DNA of 63,222 nt, the filler included, from Octopus bimaculoides (lineage: Eukaryota): the NCBI RefSeq assembly GCF_001194135.2. It is 9 parts of 9 records of this genome, joined end to end, with 100 filler letters (N's around TTAATTAATTAA, not from the genome) between each part and the next. Parts side by side here need not be neighbours in the genome. Positions count along the whole stretch, not along the records: positions 40,744 to 46,988 come from NC_069005.1; 8 more parts are not named here. One strand, written 5' to 3'. Position 1 is the first letter of the stretch; every line of letters begins with the position of its first letter. The notes beneath the pieces are model-generated. The model was not told the origin of the DNA. It was given only the letters and a program-made list of their open reading frames with translations, and searched no databases. A program made the translations under genes and the position numbers. This document shows positions 38,731 through 47,088 of this stretch, one piece after another.

Positions 38731-41009
38731 CACACAGATATTTATATACAAAGAGAGAGAAATTGGGAGCGAAGAAATTCAGATGAATGTGCCATAAACC
38801 TGGTTAACAGAAGGTCCATTGAAGAGTATGGTTATCCTTACAAGTTATAAATTTCAAGTTATTCACCAACCGATAAGGTAGTACTTTAAGCACAAAATAT
38901 AATACCAATCGGACAAAAAATGAAAAATTATATTCTTACATAACCTAATCCACTTAACGTTTCGAATGGTTTGAGTTATTTCCGCATTATACAATGGTTT
39001 GTAAGCACAACTATGCAATTAATTGATCAACCGAGTTATTAATTAATGGACTACTTATACCCCAATCATTCTTATCAGAGAACAAAGGTTATGTTAATTT
39101 TTTCGAAATCTGGCGACAAACATGCGGAATTAGGATTGTAGGCAAGAGACAGATCAGTGATTAATTCCATGTTTTGTTGTATCTCACTTAGAATATCAAA
39201 GTTTTCAGTTAACGAAGAGATTTTTTTACAAAATAAGGAACATTATAACTCTGCTTTAGCTACGGCAAGTTCTACTGCGAAGAATTCGTATATTCCAGAG
39301 GTAAATGCTATGAAAATACCTAGGGACAGTAAAATACGTTCACAATAGTAATATAAATGAATAGTAAGATATTGATAATAGTAAGGTGAAAACAGTCAAC
39401 ATTGCGATAGGGAAAATTACCTTCCAATTAAAAAGTTAAATCGTCTAAATAACTCTATGGTTATCCGTGAACACCCAGGAAAATACCTGGATAATCTACA
39501 GATTAAGAACCAAATGTAGAGGGATTAAGCGTGGCAATGAGGAATTGAGCCCAGAAATAATCCCAATAGTTCATGCAGCCACGAGGGAGCTAATATACAT
39601 AGTAATTACAAAACTAACATTAATTATGGTGACAAAGTTAAGAGAAAAAGAGTGCGTAGTAGAAATATAATGTGCTATAATGCTCCGTTCGGAATTCACG
39701 TAGCCATAGAGAACTAAAGGCTTTAGACATATATTCCCCCTCTTCTAGTTAATGTGGTAAGATATTCAACAAACATACTGTAAAGTCTGCGTACTCTAAT
39801 ACACATAACACTAGCAAAACATTCTTAAAATTTTCACAACCCCCTCCCCTACATAATTGACTTTCTTGGGTATAAATAAATATTTCAATGCCAAAGTTAA
39901 ATTATTAGTGATTCTTCCTCTTCCTTCTTAATTTACCTGCAATGTAAAATACGAAGTTCTCTTTAACATAATTCAATTTAATTAATTAAATTTATTTGTA
40001 TTTAATTTAATCCTCTTCAACCGTAATAAACCTGATATTTCTCGAAAGAAATAGAGCGGCGAGTTATTAGCCTTTAAATCGTACACAATGTTACCTTGCC
40101 CCTCAATTCCTCTCCCTCTTTCTCCAGTTTCTTTTCACACTTCTCTACTGCAGACTGTCCAGTAAATAAATTTGTTAAATAACAATTATCTTCTCTAATC
40201 TATATTCTCTAAACTATATTGACTAACATACTGTAACATTTGATGGCATCTTGATTTCCCAAAACTGTGAATTTGGCAATGGTATAATGAATCGGGTCTT
40301 GTAATTTGATATGTCTGTAACCTACAATCCCAATTTCACGAGATTTGTTTGTAGCAGATTTCGTAAAATCGAACATAATAATTTTTATGCTTTGATGAGA
40401 ATGAATGGGGGTTAACTGCTCCATTAATTACTTGATCAATTAGTTAATTAATTTATTGATTATGCATGCAAACCATTGTACGATGCGGAAACGATTCTTC
40501 TAGCCATTCGTAACGTAACGCATGTGAATAAAGTAGTATAAAAAAATAATACTTCATTTTATGTTTGATTCACACACACACGCACACACACACACACGTA
40601 TGAGTATATATATATGTATGTATATATATATATATATATATATNNNNNNNNNNNNNNNNNNNNNNNNNNNNNNNNNNNNNNNNNNNNTTAATTAATTAAN
40701 NNNNNNNNNNNNNNNNNNNNNNNNNNNNNNNNNNNNNNNNNNNTTATATACTTTACAAACTTATATTATACATACATACACACATACATACATACATACA
40801 TACATACATACATACATACATACATACATACATGCACACAAACATACATACAAAGACACATACATACATGCACACACACATAGATACATACATACATATA
40901 TACGTGCGTGCGTATGTATGTATAATGTATTGATTCATTCATTCATTCGTTCACTCATTCATTGGTATATGCTCATGCATGTTTTCCTTTTTTTTCTCTC
41001 CCCATTCAG

Positions 41010-41170
41010 GACCCAACAGCCCCTTATCCTGCATACTACCTCATTGTCTTCGTCCAAGAAGACCCCTTAATTCAAAGAGTGACAGATTCCAAATTCCTTT
41101 TATCTTGTGTCTACACAAGTGGACAGATCAACGTGTCGACATCTGAACTGTCTGTCAAAGACACCATGTG
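41010..41170 (+). CDS. Exon of a ZP-module protein (end of ZP-N plus linker)
   Basis: Strong polypyrimidine tract and CAG acceptor, donor TG|GTAAGT. DPTAPYPAYYLIVFVQEDPLIQRVTDSKFLLSCVYTSGQINVSTS... fits the ZP-N pattern Y..xVxVQxxPxI..xDxxFxxxCxY. Confidence 0.75.
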
Positions 41171-41302
41171 GTAAGTCTATCACACTCACTCATATATATG
41201 TACGTGTGTATTATTCACATACATATAGATCTGTTGTTTGTCACTGTATATGTATGGGTCTCTATCTATGCATTTTTGTATTGGTATAATTTTTCTACAC
41301 AG

Positions 41303-41463
41303 GAAAATTAAAGACTACCACTGGGAAGTTATCCAAGGTTATATAGACATGTCCTATGAACTGGGTATATACGCAGATGACGGAACCTTCAACACGCCGA
41401 TTACGACGGTGAATTTCGGAGAGAAAATGGCTCTGAAGATTGACATGTCTGGAATAGATGAAG
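41303..41463 (+). CDS. Next exon of the ZP-module protein (linker and start of ZP-C)
   Basis: TTTTCTACACAG acceptor, donor AAG|GTATGC, phase-compatible with the previous exon across a 132-nt intron (TG+G=Trp). WKIKDYHWEVIQGYIDMSYELGIYADDGTFNTPITTVNFGEKMALKIDMSGIDE resembles ZP-C 'M.L.Y.D..F..P...V..G+.L.+.+'. Confidence 0.75.
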
Positions 41464-41872
41464 GTATGCAGACTCATTGAGACAAGCCAGTCGCTTTTTT
41501 TAATCAAAATCTGATATACTAACGTGTTTTATTTTGTTATTTCTGGTGTTCTCTCTTTCTAGTTTGTAGACAATATAGATTCATACCAAAGAAGTCCTGA
41601 AAAATGTAGGGATAAACAAATGAATTTTTATAGAAATTCAGAATGGAAGTGTATATTGTCTTGTTGTGTTAATGGTTTATTTTGACTGTGACAAATCTGA
41701 CTGGCAAGTTAAAGCTAGCGTTAATAGAAAAGAAGTTTTCAATTTGGTGTCAAGAAATGTTATTCAAAATACATTGAAATACTTAGAATCGAAACAGACA
41801 TGTGAGAAGTGTTCTAGGAGAAGTGTTCACAGAGTACACACACATAGCTCTATACGCATATATGTGTGTGTA

Positions 41873-41915
<43 letters not shown>

Positions 41916-42267
41916 TCATGTTGAATCGTTAATTCCAGCAGATTTTTTTCTCTCTCCGTTATATATATATATANNNNNNNNNNNNNNNNNNNNNNNNNNN
42001 NNNNNNNNNNNNNNNNNNNNNNNNNNNNNNNNNNNNNNNNNNNNNNNNNNNNNNNNNNNNNNNNNNNNNNNNNNNNNNNNNNNNNNNNNNNNNNNNNNNN
42101 NNNNNNNNNNNNNNNNNNNNNNNNNNNNNNNNNNNNNNNNNNNNNNNNNNNNNNNNNNNNNNNNNNNNNNNNNNNNNNNNNNNNNNNNNNNNNNNNNNNN
42201 NATATATATATATATATATATATATACGTATATCTATATATATATGTTTGGACCTTATATGGGTGGT

Positions 42268-42465
42268 TTAACCCTTTAGTATTCAGATTACTCCGTCTAA
42301 TTTAATACTTATCTATTCACATTGTTTTTAATTAATCATGCATTATCTCATAGCTTCTTTGTGATTGTTTAACTTTTAGAATGACATTGTAGGGTAAGTG
42401 TGAGATGTTGGATCTGGTATGGTTTAACATAAAACAGGCAAAATATTTGAGTGGATTAAATGCTA
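42268..42465. mobile_element. TTAA-CCCTTTAG (piggyBac-like) MITE family C copy
   Basis: TTAACCCTTTAGTATTCAGATTACTC... is homologous to 45197-45995. Confidence 0.7.
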
Positions 42466-42689
42466 TTTGTTTTTTTGTTTGGGCCAGTCGATAGTGATCG
42501 GACATATCGATAATGATCTGACATACTTGTGATCCTTAGCCTTCCAGCCATGACCACCTAACCTTACTTATATCGATGAATACCTTCTCCAGTATGACCT
42601 TATTCTTTTAGACTGTAGGATGCGATTCAATTCGAGCAAACCATATTTCGGTTACCACATCAAGTCTTTGGAAAAATAAGAATTATGCA

Positions 42690-43460
42690 TCAGCTTTGGC
42701 AGCGGAAAATGGATATGTCATAGAAAAAAGGAGAAGAATCATGACAGAGTTCTTCAACATGAACGTTTGTAACCAGCAAAGATTGAATTATGTGTCGTAC
42801 AGAGAAGTTGAAAAGAGAATTTAAACAAATAGACCCATGGAACATTTTGTCCAAAAAAAAAATGGCGACAAACTGAACTAATGGCTTACACCGTCAAACC
42901 GACGTTGTTATTGGTGGTGATGGGCTGAATGGTGATTAGCATTTCGTAGGGCCTTTCATCTGTTTGGCAAGGTTCACAAATGGTAAGTTTCTTGAGCTTG
43001 TTGCAATTCTTGTTTCATTTAGAATTCAGTACATGGAACTCATGTCAGGAAACTCAAAGAAAATCAAGAAGAAAGAAAACAAAACGTTGCAAGTGTTTTA
43101 TTTCTCGGTTGAATCAAAACGAATTTATTTTTCTTTTGCTCTGATCTCGTTTCAAAAGACATTTTCTGAAAGATCGAAAGCAAAATACTGTTCTATAATG
43201 GTTAATGCCACACCTGATTCCACAAATGTCCAAAAGACGCCATTTTTCATACGTTGACTTCAAAGATTAGATTGTGAGAATTTCAGATCCTTGAGAGATT
43301 TCTGTCTTTTGAAGACTGTTGTGCAAAAACAGCTTCTGAGATTGCAGGCTTGATAAAGTAAACTGAATAAAAACAGTATTCTTTTGGAAGATTGCAAGGG
43401 TTAGAGATACAGTGGTGATGATGCCAATATGACAGTCAAAATATGAGGGAGTAAAAAAAA
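42690..43460 (+). mobile_element. Decayed hAT transposase (ZMYM1/Tip100-like)
   Basis: LAFR, NGKFLELV, AKYCSIMVNATPDSTNVQKTPFFIR, ERFLSFEDCCAKTASEIA and DCKG..Y..DDANM parallel LAFRG, NGNF, YYSIIVDxTPD, ERF and CRGQGYDNGANM. Confidence 0.8.
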
Positions 43461-43574
43461 AAATGTCATTTGATAAAAAAAATAATTTCCACTTACCTTT
43501 AGGAAAATTGCAGAACTTAAGGATATGACGATTTACCAATATGGCATACAAGAATACAATGGAGTACAAGAGAC

Positions 43575-43575
<1 letters not shown>

Positions 43576-43611
<36 letters not shown>

Positions 43612-43751
43612 ACTGTTGTTGTTGCTGTTGTTGTTGTTGTTGTTTGTTTGTTTGTTCCTTCTCGAGCTATGCCTGACTCATAAGGGCCAGTCTCCCGGTT
43701 TCATTGGCGTATAGGTTCCCCGCCTAGACGGGACGCCGGTTCGTCGCAACT
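43576..43751 (-). mobile_element. Isolated SINE/LINE 3' tail with (CAA)n
   Basis: Reverse complement GCGACGAACCGGCGTCCCGTCTAGGCGGGGAACC...GAGAAGGAACAAACAAAC matches the tail of the SINE at 56375-56483. Confidence 0.7.
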
Positions 43752-44139
43752 AGAGACTCTTACTTTACGAAAATTCATTTGTCCCTGTTTTTTTTTTTCT
43801 CGAAATGTGGATGCCATGCCTTAAATTAAAGGAACACAAATCAACAGAATGTTATTACTGAAACAGTTACCTTTTAGGGAAATATTCAAAGTGTCCATAA
43901 TATCTTTTTCTTCAGTCCAAAACCGAAACAGCAGAAGTTGTTTATCATTGTCTTTTGTATGTCAACTCCGCCGTAATCAGCTCGACTTGCTGAGACGAAA
44001 GCATTTGTCCCAAATCTCAGAGGTAGCAAACTGACCTTGTAGGATGTTATCTGTCACCTCCAGATGTATGCTTCCCCAGATGTATGCTTCTCCAGATGTA
44101 TGCATATGCCTCTAGATGTATACTCCTTCAGACGTATAT

Positions 44140-44149
44140 GCTGTTGCTG

Positions 44150-44192
<43 letters not shown>

Positions 44193-44219
44193 GATTATTA
44201 TTATTATTATTATTATTAT

Positions 44220-44275
<56 letters not shown>

Positions 44276-44328
44276 TCGTTGTTGTTGTTGTTGTTATTAT
44301 TATCGTTGTTGCTGCTGTTATTATTATC
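44140..44328. repeat. Compound trinucleotide microsatellite (ATT)n-(AGT)n-(GTT)n; a larger compound tract lies at 46508-46826
   Basis: Direct reading. Confidence 0.95.
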
Positions 44329-44810
44329 GTTGGCACGCCGGGCGAAATGCTTAGCGGTATTTCGCCCGTCGCTACGTTCTGAGTTCAAATTCCACCGAGG
44401 TCGACTTTGCCTTTCATTCTTTCAGGGTTGATGAACTAAGTACCAGTGAAACACTGGGGTCGATGCAATCGACTAGCTTCCTGCCCCTAAATTTCAGGCC
44501 TTGTGCCTTTAGTAGAAAGGATTATTATTATCATCAGCATTATTATTAAAGTGGCGAGCTGACAAACTCGTTATTGACACGCGTGCATAGAATTATTTCG
44601 GACACTTGAAGGCGGAGAGTTGGCAGATTCGTTAAACATTTTTTCAGATTCTTTACATTCAGAGGTCAAATCCGACAGAGGCCATCTTTACCTTTTATTC
44701 TTTCGGAATCGATGAAATAAAGTACCAGTCAAGTACTAACGTCTATGCACTCGACAAAGCCCCTCCCCTCAAAACCTATGTCCTTGTAAATCAGAAATGG
44801 TTATTTCAGA
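44329..44810 (+). mobile_element. Two to three adjacent SINE family A copies (44329-44530 well preserved; 44549-44810 old)
   Basis: Core GAGTTCAAATTCCACCGAGGTCGACTTTGCCTTTCATT...AAGTACCAG. Confidence 0.8.
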
Positions 44811-45196
44811 CATTAGGTTTTATGTCCCTGTTTGATTCTGTTATCGAGGATTATTGATTTCAGATTTTAAGCTGTATTTTATCATTTTTTCGTAGTAATA
44901 CCTGTCTGTACTGGAAAAATCTCTTGGTCCTAAAAGCATGTCATTTGCCGAAATTTACAATGCCAATGTATACGAGTCAAAGACCTTTCAATCGAATTAA
45001 ATTGACATAGAAACGAAACTACACCATGACAATTTTGAGTAACTACAAATTAAATCCGCTGATTAGCTCAACAAAATGTACATCAAGTTGTAAAACAATG
45101 TTCCAAATCTTTATACATCACTCTAGGTATTCCCCTCACCCACCGGACAACGCCTACAATGGCAGACAGCACCAGCAGAACAATCAGTCAATGTGC

Positions 45197-45995
45197 TTAG
45201 CTCTTTAGCATTCAGATTACTCTGTCGAATGTAATGCTTATTTACTCACATTCTCTGGTATTAATTATGCATTATCTTGTAGCTTCGAGACGTTGACGAT
45301 GTGATCACTTTTAGAACGACATGATAGAGTAGGTGTGTGAGGCTGTGTCAGACTGGTTTGAATATAAAACAGGCAGAATATTTGGGTCAGATATTGCTGG
45401 TTTAACCCTTTAGCATTCAGATTACTCTGTCAAATGTATAGCTTATTTATTCACAATGTTTTGAATTAATCATGCATTTTCTTGTAGCTTAGAAATTTCG
45501 TTGTAGGGTAGGTGAGAGAGACCAAATCAGGTCAGTTTGAACAGTTTTATATGCAATCGTTCGATTCTGTGTTTGCTTTCCAAGAATTTTGATCTGGGAC
45601 CTTGTATTGAAATCAATGTAGTTACATTTGGGAAGATTCAGGGACTTATCAAATTATATTCGTCTTAAATTCTTTCTGATTGTAGTACAAAACCAGTAAT
45701 TTGAAGGGAGGGGTTGATACAGAGACAGAGAGCCAAAGAGCAAGAACATTTGAGCTAGATATTGCTGGTGGAGCTCTTTAGCGTTACACCAGCTGTTTAG
45801 CTATACTCTGTCAAATGTAATGCGTACGTATTCACATTGTTTTGAATGACTCACAAATTATCATGTACCTTCGAGGTTTAGATGATGGGGTTATTTATTT
45901 TTAGAATATTGTAAAATAGATGTGAGAGGCTGTATCTGGCTGGTCTGAGCACAAAACTGGTAGGATATTCGGGCCAGATATGAACAGCTTAAAGG
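45197..45995 (+). mobile_element. Cluster of three MITE family C units, two of them directly tandem
   Basis: CTTTAGCATTCAGATTACTCTGTC recurs at ~45203 and ~45407; a decayed third unit spans ~45745-45995. Confidence 0.75.
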
Positions 45996-46750
45996 ATATA
46001 GAACTGTTTCAAAAAATAAACATATCAGAAAATGATCTGGGGATATTAGTTCCACGCGGCGTGGAATCAGAACACTTTCGAGATATTAACTCCTAGTATA
46101 TTACGCAAAAGTGTGCGCACAAAAATGCACGCAAAGCACTTTTTCAAAAAAAGATCAGAAACCCAATTACCCATTTTATGTTCTTTACTAATTAATGGAT
46201 AATTAAAATTAAGCCGTTTGGGAATTTAATAATTAGTGGGTGGAGGGGCCTTTCAAACAGGTCTTGGTCAAAGTAGAAATATGTGTCTCGACGGCCCGGC
46301 ATTGTAGTGCAGTTGTTTCCCAGAGTGTCGTATAGATGTATTTGAGTTTGTAATGATTTCCCAAGGTTCGATTTTACGTTTCACCATTCAGTGATCAATA
46401 AATGAAATACTAGATAAGTACTGTTTAACATTGATCTAATCGATTGCTGCCTTCTCCCACCCAAAATGTGTGGCCTTTGTAACTATGTTAGAAATCCTAA
46501 TTCCTCTCCTTCTTCTTCTTCTTCTTCTTATTATTATTATTATTATTATTATTTTTTTTTTTTTTTTTTTTTTGTTGTAGTAGTAGTAGTAGTATCGTTG
46601 TTGTTGCTGTTATTATTATTATTATTATTATTATTATCAATATTATTATTGTTATCATTATTATTACTACATTATTACCATTACTACCGTTGCCATTATA
46701 TTATTATCAATAGTAGCATCATCATCAGCAGCAGCAGCAGTAGCAGTAGC

Positions 46751-46825
<75 letters not shown>

Positions 46826-47088
46826 CAGATTTGTGTTTAATGAAGTTATTAATGATCACGGGCAGCACATCAATGTTGATTATTGTAACAAACACAAATT
46901 AGACAGCCATTGGAGATGCATGAGGAGTGGAATTCTAAATAATAATAATAATAACAATAATGACAATAATAATAACAATAATAATAATNNNNNNNNNNNN
47001 NNNNNNNNNNNNNNNNNNNNNNNNNNNNNNNNTTAATTAATTAANNNNNNNNNNNNNNNNNNNNNNNNNNNNNNNNNNNNNNNNNNNN

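What the first reader, a model, noticed from the sequence alone, without database searches (positions are those of the whole stretch)
41010..41463. Hidden ZP-module gene, split by a 132-nt intron and not recoverable from the ORF track
Seen: two 161-nt exons with canonical splice sites join in frame into a 107-aa peptide with ZP-N-end and ZP-C-start patterns. Established: ZP modules polymerise in extracellular matrices, and molluscs have EGF-ZP proteins in shell matrix and ZP proteins in egg coats. Inference: a divergent cephalopod ZP protein. If it is related to shell-matrix EGF-ZP proteins in an octopus with a reduced shell, its fate (egg envelope, skin, sucker or beak cuticle, or loss) is the most interesting biological question in the window.
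Basis: partly seen in the sequence, partly recalled or inferred. Interest (0 to 1): 0.72.

Follow-up and report, generated by a model that had tools for sequence, protein, structure and literature searches.

The report
Two exons of an octopus ZP gene
The two short exons are real and are exons 3 and 4 of a zona-pellucida-module gene of Octopus bimaculoides; RefSeq already has the gene with this same splice but as two unnamed fragments, so this is an ordinary gene with an annotation fault and not a hidden discovery.

Summary
Observation confirmed. Exon 41010-41170 and exon 41303-41463 are separated by a 132-nt GT..AG intron.

The piece is Octopus bimaculoides chromosome CM046625.1. RefSeq XP_014777609.1 (LOC106874398, "uncharacterized") contains the peptide at 100% identity across the same junction, so the gene is not hidden.

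The same exon boundaries occur in O. sinensis and Argonauta hians. Cuttlefish RNA-seq contigs carry the joined sequence.

Alone, the peptide hits no Pfam model. Full-length orthologs hit VERL_C (PF25272, 55-61 bits) and ZP-C (PF00100, 26-27 bits). In a chimera test the window peptide added about 21 bits to the VERL_C match; three shuffled versions added 0-4.

The family has a signal peptide, four ZP-N cysteines, six ZP-C cysteines, an R-x-K/R-R cleavage motif and a C-terminal membrane anchor. It has no EGF domain, so the shell-matrix EGF-ZP idea is not supported.

The RefSeq model is faulty. Its last exon (42619-42824) has stop codons in O. sinensis, and the real ZP-C remainder lies about 18 kb downstream as a separate model, LOC128250822.

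Tissue and function are unknown. Verdict: a new, unnamed member of a known kind; low interest.

The parts
40981..41009 (+). Polypyrimidine tract and AG acceptor of intron 2, upstream of exon 3
   Evidence: Sequence TTTTCCTTTTTTTTCTCTCCCCATTCAG. The same acceptor is present in O. sinensis.
41010..41170 (+). Exon 3 (161 nt, starts in phase 0, ends after 2 nt of the W codon). It encodes DPTAPY...KDTMW: the last ZP-N strands with the fourth conserved cysteine (FLLSCVY), an N-V-S sequon, and the start of the interdomain linker.
   Evidence: 100% identical to XP_014777609.1. Conserved exon in O. sinensis and Argonauta. Cysteine invariant in alignment A3.
41171..41302 (+). Intron 3, 132 nt, GTAAGT...CACAG
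   Evidence: The orthologous intron is 801 nt in O. sinensis, enlarged by a 20-nt minisatellite and a TG-rich tract, and about 1.45 kb in Argonauta. Position and phase are the same.
41303..41463 (+). Exon 4 (161 nt, ends in phase 1). It encodes KIKDYH...MSGIDE: the rest of the linker and the first strands of ZP-C. It contains no cysteine.
   Evidence: Pfam ZP-C (PF00100) aligns from about peptide residue 74 onward when the rest of ZP-C is supplied. In Sepia P0007 it aligns from residue 168.
41464..46988 (+). Intron 4, incomplete; it runs on beyond the piece. It contains an assembly gap (41976-42201), microsatellites and interspersed repeats. No further conserved ZP exon lies here.
   Evidence: tblastn with the Argonauta and Sepia ZP-C exons finds nothing in the piece. 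The region is collinear with O. sinensis intron sequence at about 88% identity. In Argonauta the next exon is 7.6 kb downstream of exon 4.
42619..42824 (+). Terminal coding exon of the RefSeq model XP_014777609.1 (GCDSIRANH...EVEKRI, stop TAA). It is not conserved as coding sequence, so it is probably an annotation artefact or a species-specific alternative 3' end.
   Evidence: 100% match to P0005 residues 194-261. The O. sinensis counterpart has three in-frame stops and an indel. It has no Pfam match. It is absent from the Argonauta and Sepia proteins.

Best explanation
The two exons are exons 3 and 4 of an eight-exon gene for a membrane-anchored precursor of a secreted zona-pellucida-module protein. 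The gene is found in coleoid cephalopods: Octopus, Argonauta and Sepia.

The precursor consists of a signal peptide, a ZP-N domain with four cysteines, a linker, a ZP-C domain with six cysteines, an R-x-K/R-R cleavage motif, a short hydrophobic strand and a C-terminal transmembrane helix. The window encodes the end of ZP-N, the whole interdomain linker and the start of ZP-C. In ZP proteins whose filaments have been solved, these are the parts that rearrange to build the filament.

Shown here: the exons, their splicing, their conservation, and their homology to the ZP module of the VERL_C/ZP-C type.

Inferred from established knowledge of ZP modules (uromodulin, ZP2/ZP3): a furin-type protease cuts at the RIKR/RVRR/RVKR site, the blocking C-terminal strand leaves, and the ectodomain polymerises into extracellular filaments on an apical surface or egg envelope. 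Which matrix is not known. Full-length transcripts in whole Sepia larvae show expression outside mature oocytes.

In O. bimaculoides the gene looks intact, but RefSeq splits it into LOC106874398 and LOC128250822 because the assembly is full of gaps.
For: - Exon coordinates and reading frame.
- Identity to RefSeq XP_014777609.1, and the O. sinensis ortholog at 97%.
- Locus on CM046625.1.
- Conserved exon boundaries in O. sinensis and Argonauta, and the eight-exon map in Argonauta.
- Exons 97.8% identical between the two Octopus species against about 88% for introns.
- Spliced cuttlefish mRNAs. Runs identified as Sepia esculenta larvae in PMC10442824 and PMC10141105.
- Pfam VERL_C at 54.7-61.5 bits (cut-off 27.2), and ZP-C at 26.4 and 26.9 bits (cut-off 24.6), on the orthologs.
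- Chimera control: 59.9-61.4 bits with the real window peptide, 38.4 bits without it, and 38.3, 42.2 and 39.7 bits with it shuffled.
- Ten cysteines, the cleavage motif and the hydrophobic C-terminus: seen.
- Missing ZP-C half found as P0008 (LOC128250822), same strand, about 18.4 kb downstream.
Against: - The 107-aa peptide alone matches no Pfam model and no PDB sequence.
- Family profiles find no PDB chain.
- Both AlphaFold runs failed (mean pLDDT 33.7 and 30.4), so the fold was not confirmed.
- In O. bimaculoides, exon 5 (with the fifth cysteine) and the transmembrane exon were not seen. They may lie in assembly gaps, but loss cannot be excluded.
- No octopus transcript was examined, so use of the junction in O. 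bimaculoides itself rests on the RefSeq model and on orthologs.
- pN/pS is about 0.36, but it rests on only 7 substitutions.
- Cleavage, polymerisation and location are inferred, not tested.
Confidence: 0.85

Rival explanations
1. It is an egg-coat protein: the cephalopod counterpart of the abalone vitelline-envelope ZP proteins (VERL/VEZP), made by oocytes or follicle cells and built into the chorion.
For: The best Pfam model by far is VERL_C (PF25272), at 55-61 bits on orthologs. The VEZP family is a recognised molluscan ZP clade (PMC9290575).
Against: Full-length transcripts were assembled from many whole-larva Sepia esculenta libraries and, probably, a Sepia pharaonis whole-animal run. Larvae have no mature oocytes. 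The protein has a single ZP module and none of the tandem ZP-N repeats that characterise VERL (my knowledge of VERL; not tested here). A Pfam model name does not establish location.
Confidence: 0.25
2. It is a relative of the molluscan shell-matrix EGF-ZP proteins that has been retained or repurposed in a shell-less octopus.
For: EGF-ZP homologs do exist in cephalopods, including O. bimaculoides and O. vulgaris (PMC9290575).
Against: No EGF model hits any family member at E up to 10. The signal peptide is followed directly by ZP-N. The gene is equally present in Sepia, which has a cuttlebone, in Octopus, and in Argonauta, whose shell-like egg case is not a true shell. No phylogeny was run.
Confidence: 0.05
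3. In O. bimaculoides the gene is a decaying or truncated copy. The short RefSeq product (ZP-N plus a third of ZP-C plus an unrelated tail) would then be the real product, or the locus would be a pseudogene.
For: The RefSeq model ends in a non-ZP exon at 42619-42824. Exon 5 and the transmembrane exon were not found in the available O. bimaculoides sequence.
Against: All six exons that can be seen are open. Exon 6 is 89% identical in protein to Argonauta. Exons 3 and 4 are much better conserved than the introns. The RefSeq tail has stops in O. sinensis. About 11 kb of the 30-kb locus L011 is N, which is enough to hide two short exons.
Confidence: 0.1
4. The two open segments and their splice sites are a chance pattern in AT-rich intronic DNA.
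For: Open stretches of about 50 codons are common in this piece. The peptide alone has no family hit.
Against: There is exact identity to a RefSeq protein, conserved exon boundaries in two further genera, mRNA contigs in cuttlefish, and a 21-bit profile contribution that shuffling removes.
Confidence: 0.01

Closest known systems
ZP module of abalone VERL and the vitelline-envelope ZP proteins (Pfam PF25272 VERL_C)
   Same: Best-scoring profile. It aligns over positions 37-231 of 231, covering the end of ZP-N, the linker and all of ZP-C, well above the curated cut-off. Both are molluscan.
   Different: There is no array of tandem ZP-N repeats in front of the module (VERL's repeats are from my knowledge, not tested here). 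The protein is short (about 350-380 aa). It is expressed in cuttlefish larvae. Sequence similarity is too low for phmmer to reach any non-cephalopod protein among 1.84 billion representatives.
Type II ZP-module precursors such as uromodulin and ZP1/ZP2 (Pfam PF00100 ZP-C)
   Same: Same architecture: signal peptide, ZP-N with 4 cysteines, ZP-C with 6 cysteines ending in a C-x4-C-x3-C-x4-C cluster, a basic cleavage motif, a hydrophobic strand, and a membrane anchor. PF00100 is just above its cut-off in both Sepia proteins.
   Different: There are no extra N-terminal domains. PF00100 is below its cut-off in Argonauta and in the Octopus chimera (14-15 bits). There is no detectable sequence match to any solved ZP structure. 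The cysteine-pattern comparison with uromodulin is from memory and is only a lead.
Molluscan EGF-ZP shell-matrix proteins (PMC9290575)
   Same: Both carry a ZP module followed by a furin-type site and a transmembrane domain, and both occur in cephalopods.
   Different: This family has no EGF-like domain. The relationship of the two ZP modules to each other was not tested.
Nematode cuticlins (Pfam PF25301 CUT_C)
   Same: Weak overlap with the ZP-C region (13.8-15.4 bits).
   Different: Far below the cut-off of 30 bits. This is only the general ZP-C resemblance.

Membership tests
ZP (zona pellucida) module proteins | ZP-N domain with four conserved cysteines | tested here: met
   Four cysteines are invariant in all five aligned sequences (A3 columns 17, 49, 68, 104). 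The fourth (FLLSCVY) is encoded in the window at exon 3. The other three lie in exon 2, outside the piece.
ZP (zona pellucida) module proteins | ZP-C domain with its conserved cysteines | tested here: met
   Six cysteines are conserved in Argonauta and both Sepia proteins. O. bimaculoides P0008 shows five of them. The first sits in exon 5, which is unseen in the gapped assembly.
ZP (zona pellucida) module proteins | Significant match to curated ZP profiles | tested here: met
   VERL_C scores 54.7-61.5 bits (cut-off 27.2) and PF00100 scores 26.4 and 26.9 bits (cut-off 24.6) on orthologs. The window peptide adds about 21 bits, against 0-4 bits for three shuffles. The peptide alone gives no hit.
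ZP (zona pellucida) module proteins | Precursor layout: signal peptide, basic cleavage site after ZP-C, hydrophobic patch, C-terminal membrane anchor | tested here: met
   Read directly from the sequences: a hydrophobic N-terminus; RVRR (Argonauta), RIKR (O. bimaculoides) and RVKR (Sepia); then a hydrophobic stretch and a C-terminal hydrophobic helix in Argonauta and Sepia. No signal-peptide or transmembrane predictor was available. The O. bimaculoides anchor exon was not seen.
ZP (zona pellucida) module proteins | Two immunoglobulin-like beta-sandwich domains | tested here: inconclusive
   Two AlphaFold2 runs with alignments of 4 and 6 sequences gave mean pLDDT 33.7 and 30.4. No fold search was justified.
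ZP (zona pellucida) module proteins | Cleavage-dependent polymerisation into extracellular filaments | not testable with these tools
   Needs expression and biochemistry.
Molluscan EGF-ZP shell-matrix proteins | EGF-like domain(s) N-terminal to the ZP module | tested here: not met
   No EGF family is listed for any member at E up to 10. ZP-N starts about 10 residues after the signal peptide.
VERL / vitelline-envelope ZP proteins | Match to the VERL_C profile above the curated cut-off | tested here: met
VERL / vitelline-envelope ZP proteins | Tandem ZP-N repeats that bind sperm lysin, and location in the egg vitelline envelope | tested here: not met
   The repeat part was tested and not met: the proteins are 353-378 aa with a single ZP-N. 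Location is not testable here. Transcripts occur in whole cuttlefish larvae. That VERL has these repeats is from my knowledge and from PMC3567151 as listed, which I did not read in full.
Cuticlins | Match to CUT_C above the cut-off | tested here: not met
   13.8-15.4 bits against a cut-off of 30.

The most novel reading that the evidence does not exclude
This small ZP family has so far been found only in coleoid cephalopods, and it has no detectable sequence relative elsewhere among 1.84 billion protein representatives. It could be the filament-forming core of a cephalopod-specific extracellular matrix. Candidates are the chorion that sperm must pass, or a somatic apical matrix such as the sucker or beak lining or the statocyst cupula. 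In that case it would be a lineage-specific descendant of the molluscan egg-coat (VERL-type) ZP module put to a new use.
Probability: 0.2. Interest if true: 0.5.

Novelty: new member of a known kind. Interest (0 to 1): 0.2.

Why it matters
The practical value is modest and has three parts.

- **Annotation fault.** One O. bimaculoides gene is split into two "uncharacterized" RefSeq loci (LOC106874398 and LOC128250822), with a spurious terminal exon. Because of this, neither fragment is recognised as a whole ZP protein, and domain-based censuses of cephalopod ZP genes may miss or miscount it.
- **An unnamed family gets a name.** The Octopus, Argonauta and Sepia proteins form a compact VERL_C-type ZP-module family without EGF domains.
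- **A direction for follow-up.** Anyone looking for cephalopod egg-coat or apical-matrix proteins now has a candidate whose expression in cuttlefish larvae can be followed up.

It opens no new mechanism, and nothing here links it to shell loss.

Tried and rejected
- **Pfam and PDB sequence searches with the peptide alone:** nothing relevant.
- **First word-indexed protein search with the peptide:** no hit, although exact matches exist in that collection. This is a sensitivity limit of that tool, not evidence of absence.
- **Profile searches of PDB with family alignments A1 and A3:** no hit at E up to 10.
- **Two AlphaFold2 predictions** (Argonauta full length, and the Sepia ZP module; alignments of 4 and 6 sequences): mean pLDDT 33.7 and 30.4, unusable, so no fold search was run.
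- **Search for the remaining ZP-C exons** inside the piece, in the 8.3 kb downstream in O. sinensis, and in L001: none found. They were then found further downstream through P0008.
- **Rfam and tRNA scans of the piece:** empty.
- **Literature:** no paper in the library names the loci or accessions. The supplements of PMC9290575 are not held. Searches on VERL or zona pellucida plus cephalopods gave nothing specific.
- **Rejected readings:** chance ORFs, an EGF-ZP relative, and a cuticlin, for the reasons given under rivals and membership.

Full report
**1. The observation**

The piece (window 40744-46988) is AT-rich animal DNA with microsatellites and interspersed repeats.

- Exon A is 41010-41170. 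It follows a strong polypyrimidine tract and AG, and is followed by GTAAGT.
- Exon B is 41303-41463. It follows TTTTTCTACACAG and is followed by GTATGC.
- The intron between them is 132 nt.
- The joined 322 nt is open only in frame 0. It gives DPTAPYPAYYLIVFVQEDPLIQRVTDSKFLLSCVYTSGQINVSTSELSVKDTMW|KIKDYHWEVIQGYIDMSYELGIYADDGTFNTPITTVNFGEKMALKIDMSGIDE.
- Read without splicing, the frame stops straight after the W codon.

**2. Is it a real, used splice?**

An exhaustive HMMER scan of 1.84 billion protein representatives with the peptide gave three strong hits, each covering residues 1-107 without a break at the junction.

- P0001 is 97% identical.
- P0002 is 71% identical.
- P0003 is 53% identical.

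Cluster look-up identified them.

- P0001 is XP_029653703.1 (Octopus sinensis LOC115226848, partial).
- Its cluster mate P0005 is XP_014777609.1 (Octopus bimaculoides LOC106874398, "uncharacterized").
- P0002 and P0006 are two Argonauta hians proteins.

P0005 contains the peptide at 100% identity. The piece maps at 100% to GCA_001194135.2 CM046625.1, between assembly gaps. The gene and this exact junction are therefore already in RefSeq.

Independent support comes from other genomes and from mRNA.

- O. sinensis has both exons at 161 nt, with the same AG and GT sites.
- Argonauta hians has an intron at the same codon.
- P0003 and P0007 come from intron-less RNA-seq contigs in 7 and 17 sequencing runs.
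- Several of the P0007 runs are Sepia esculenta larvae: PMC10442824, read, pooled RNA of whole-larva samples, and PMC10141105 is listed.
- P0003 is probably Sepia pharaonis. This is inferred because SRR3011302 is adjacent to SRR3011300, which PMC5541922 lists as S. pharaonis whole animal.

Conservation also fits coding sequence. Between the two Octopus species the exons differ at 7 of 322 nt (97.8% identity, three amino-acid changes). The surrounding introns align at about 88%.

**3. What the peptide is**

Alone, the 107 aa hit no relevant Pfam model and no PDB sequence. The full-length orthologs tell a different story.

| Protein | VERL_C (PF25272), cut-off 27.2 bits | ZP-C (PF00100), cut-off 24.6 bits |
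|---|---|---|
| Argonauta P0002 / P0006 | 57.8 / 57.5 | 14.9 / 14.4 |
| Sepia P0003 | 54.7 | 26.4 |
| Sepia P0007 | 61.5 | 26.9 |

In each case the VERL_C alignment starts about eight to ten residues before the segment that matches the window peptide.

To test the window sequence itself I ran a chimera test. The chimera joined the O. bimaculoides N-terminal part, Argonauta exon 5 as a filler, and the O. bimaculoides C-terminal fragment.

| Construct | VERL_C score (bits) | Where the alignment begins |
|---|---|---|
| Full chimera | 61.4 | residue 78 (peptide starts at 87) |
| Window peptide + filler + C-part | 59.9 | peptide residue 23 |
| No peptide | 38.4 | in the filler |
| Peptide shuffled, three trials | 38.3, 42.2, 39.7 | only after the shuffled part |

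The window peptide therefore contributes about 21 bits at the expected place in the profile. PF00100 begins to align at about peptide residue 74.

Exon 3 carries the last strands of ZP-N, including the fourth cysteine. Exon 4 carries the linker and the first strands of ZP-C.

**4. The whole protein**

The alignment of the five family sequences shows a complete ZP-module precursor:

- a hydrophobic N-terminal signal;
- four invariant ZP-N cysteines;
- six ZP-C cysteines, ending in FEC-x4-C-x3-C-x4-C;
- a conserved basic motif: RVRR in Argonauta, RIKR in O. bimaculoides, RVKR in Sepia;
- a short hydrophobic stretch after the motif;
- in Argonauta and Sepia, a C-terminal hydrophobic helix followed by basic residues.

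No EGF or other domain is present.

By analogy with solved ZP proteins, I infer the following mechanism: cleavage at the basic site, release of the blocking strand, and head-to-tail polymerisation through ZP-N, the linker and ZP-C. This step rests on established knowledge of the family, not on a test here.

**5. The annotation fault**

XP_014777609.1 continues after exon 4 into an exon at 42619-42824 (GCDSIRANH...EVEKRI). Three things mark this exon as wrong.

- It has no family match.
- It is absent from the Argonauta and Sepia proteins.
- Its O. sinensis counterpart carries three in-frame stops and an indel.

In Argonauta the gene has eight exons over 30.7 kb. Exon 5 is only 24 codons long and lies 7.6 kb beyond exon 4. 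Exon 6 lies a further 9.6 kb on.

A profile search then recovered P0008, which is O. bimaculoides LOC128250822 (103 aa; VERL_C 33.1 bits). Its sequence, CSTSSLLDKNVGFISN...RIKR..., is the ortholog of Argonauta exons 6 and 7. It lies on the same strand, about 18.4 kb downstream of exon 4.

One gene has therefore been split into two models. About 11 kb of the 30-kb locus L011 is N, which can easily hide exon 5 and the anchor exon. Every exon that can be seen is open, so I judge the gene intact. This is not proven.

**6. Function**

The tissue is unknown.

- The VERL_C model name points to egg coats.
- The cuttlefish transcripts come from whole larvae, so the gene is expressed outside mature oocytes.
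- The gene occurs in animals with a cuttlebone, with stylets only, and in Argonauta, whose shell-like egg case is not a true shell. It also lacks EGF domains. Nothing therefore ties it to shell matrix.

I commit to a secreted, filament-forming component of an apical extracellular matrix or egg envelope. Confidence in the molecular kind is about 0.85. Confidence in any particular matrix is low.

**7. What failed**

- Both structure predictions were useless.
- PDB profile searches were empty.
- No paper names these loci.

**8. Verdict**

- The ZP reading is right.
- "Hidden" and "EGF-ZP shell-matrix relative" are not right.
- It is an ordinary spliced gene of a known kind, belonging to a small unnamed cephalopod family and carrying a correctable annotation error.
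- Interest is low.

Noticed in passing
window 42619-42824; L011 19203-19364 and 19863-20006: RefSeq splits one O. bimaculoides gene into LOC106874398 (with a non-conserved terminal exon inside intron 4) and LOC128250822 (the second half of ZP-C). Exon 5 and the transmembrane exon are missing, probably in N gaps.
   Followed up: yes
window 41171-41302; L002 12334-13134; L003 about 18981-20433: Intron 3 is 132 nt in O. bimaculoides, 801 nt in O. sinensis and about 1.45 kb in Argonauta. The O. sinensis excess is a 20-nt minisatellite (GTGTGACCGAGTGTGTGTGG, about 12 copies) plus a TG-rich tract. Expansion there, or deletion or assembly collapse in O. bimaculoides, cannot be told apart.
   Followed up: partly
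window 42244-42452, 45173-45387, 45378-45508, 45735-45974: Four copies (60-82% alike) of an interspersed repeat of about 200 nt lie inside intron 4. Copies also occur in the O. sinensis intron. The element was not identified.
   Followed up: no
window 44335-44480, 44610-44740, 46290-46420 (and reverse strand around 43680-43750): By eye these segments look related to one another (...TTCAAATTCCACCGAGGTCGACTTTGCCTTTCATTCTTTCAGGGTTGAT...AAGTACCAGT...) and sit next to trinucleotide arrays. This resembles a short interspersed element. ARAGORN and Rfam found no tRNA or RNA family.
   Followed up: no
window 40768-40903, 43575-43644, 44153-44332, 46528-46825, 46938-46988: Dense microsatellites: (ATAC)34 about 100 nt upstream of exon 3, (TGT)23, and long TTA/GTA/AGT arrays. 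(TA)n borders the 226-N assembly gap at 41976-42201.
   Followed up: no
P0002 and P0006 (Argonauta hians contigs of 1,015,101 and 1,001,303 nt): Argonauta hians carries two copies that are 94% identical, on different contigs of about 1 Mb. Both are named after O. sinensis LOC115226848. They could be haplotigs or a recent duplication.
   Followed up: no
The word-indexed protein search missed proteins that contain the query exactly or nearly so (P0001, P0005, P0002). It found them only when queried with an alignment. A negative result from that tool on short eukaryotic peptides should not be read as absence.
   Followed up: partly
window 41010-41170 and 41303-41463: The two exons have exactly the same length (161 nt), and this holds in O. 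sinensis too. There is no sequence similarity between them, so it looks like coincidence and not duplication.
   Followed up: partly
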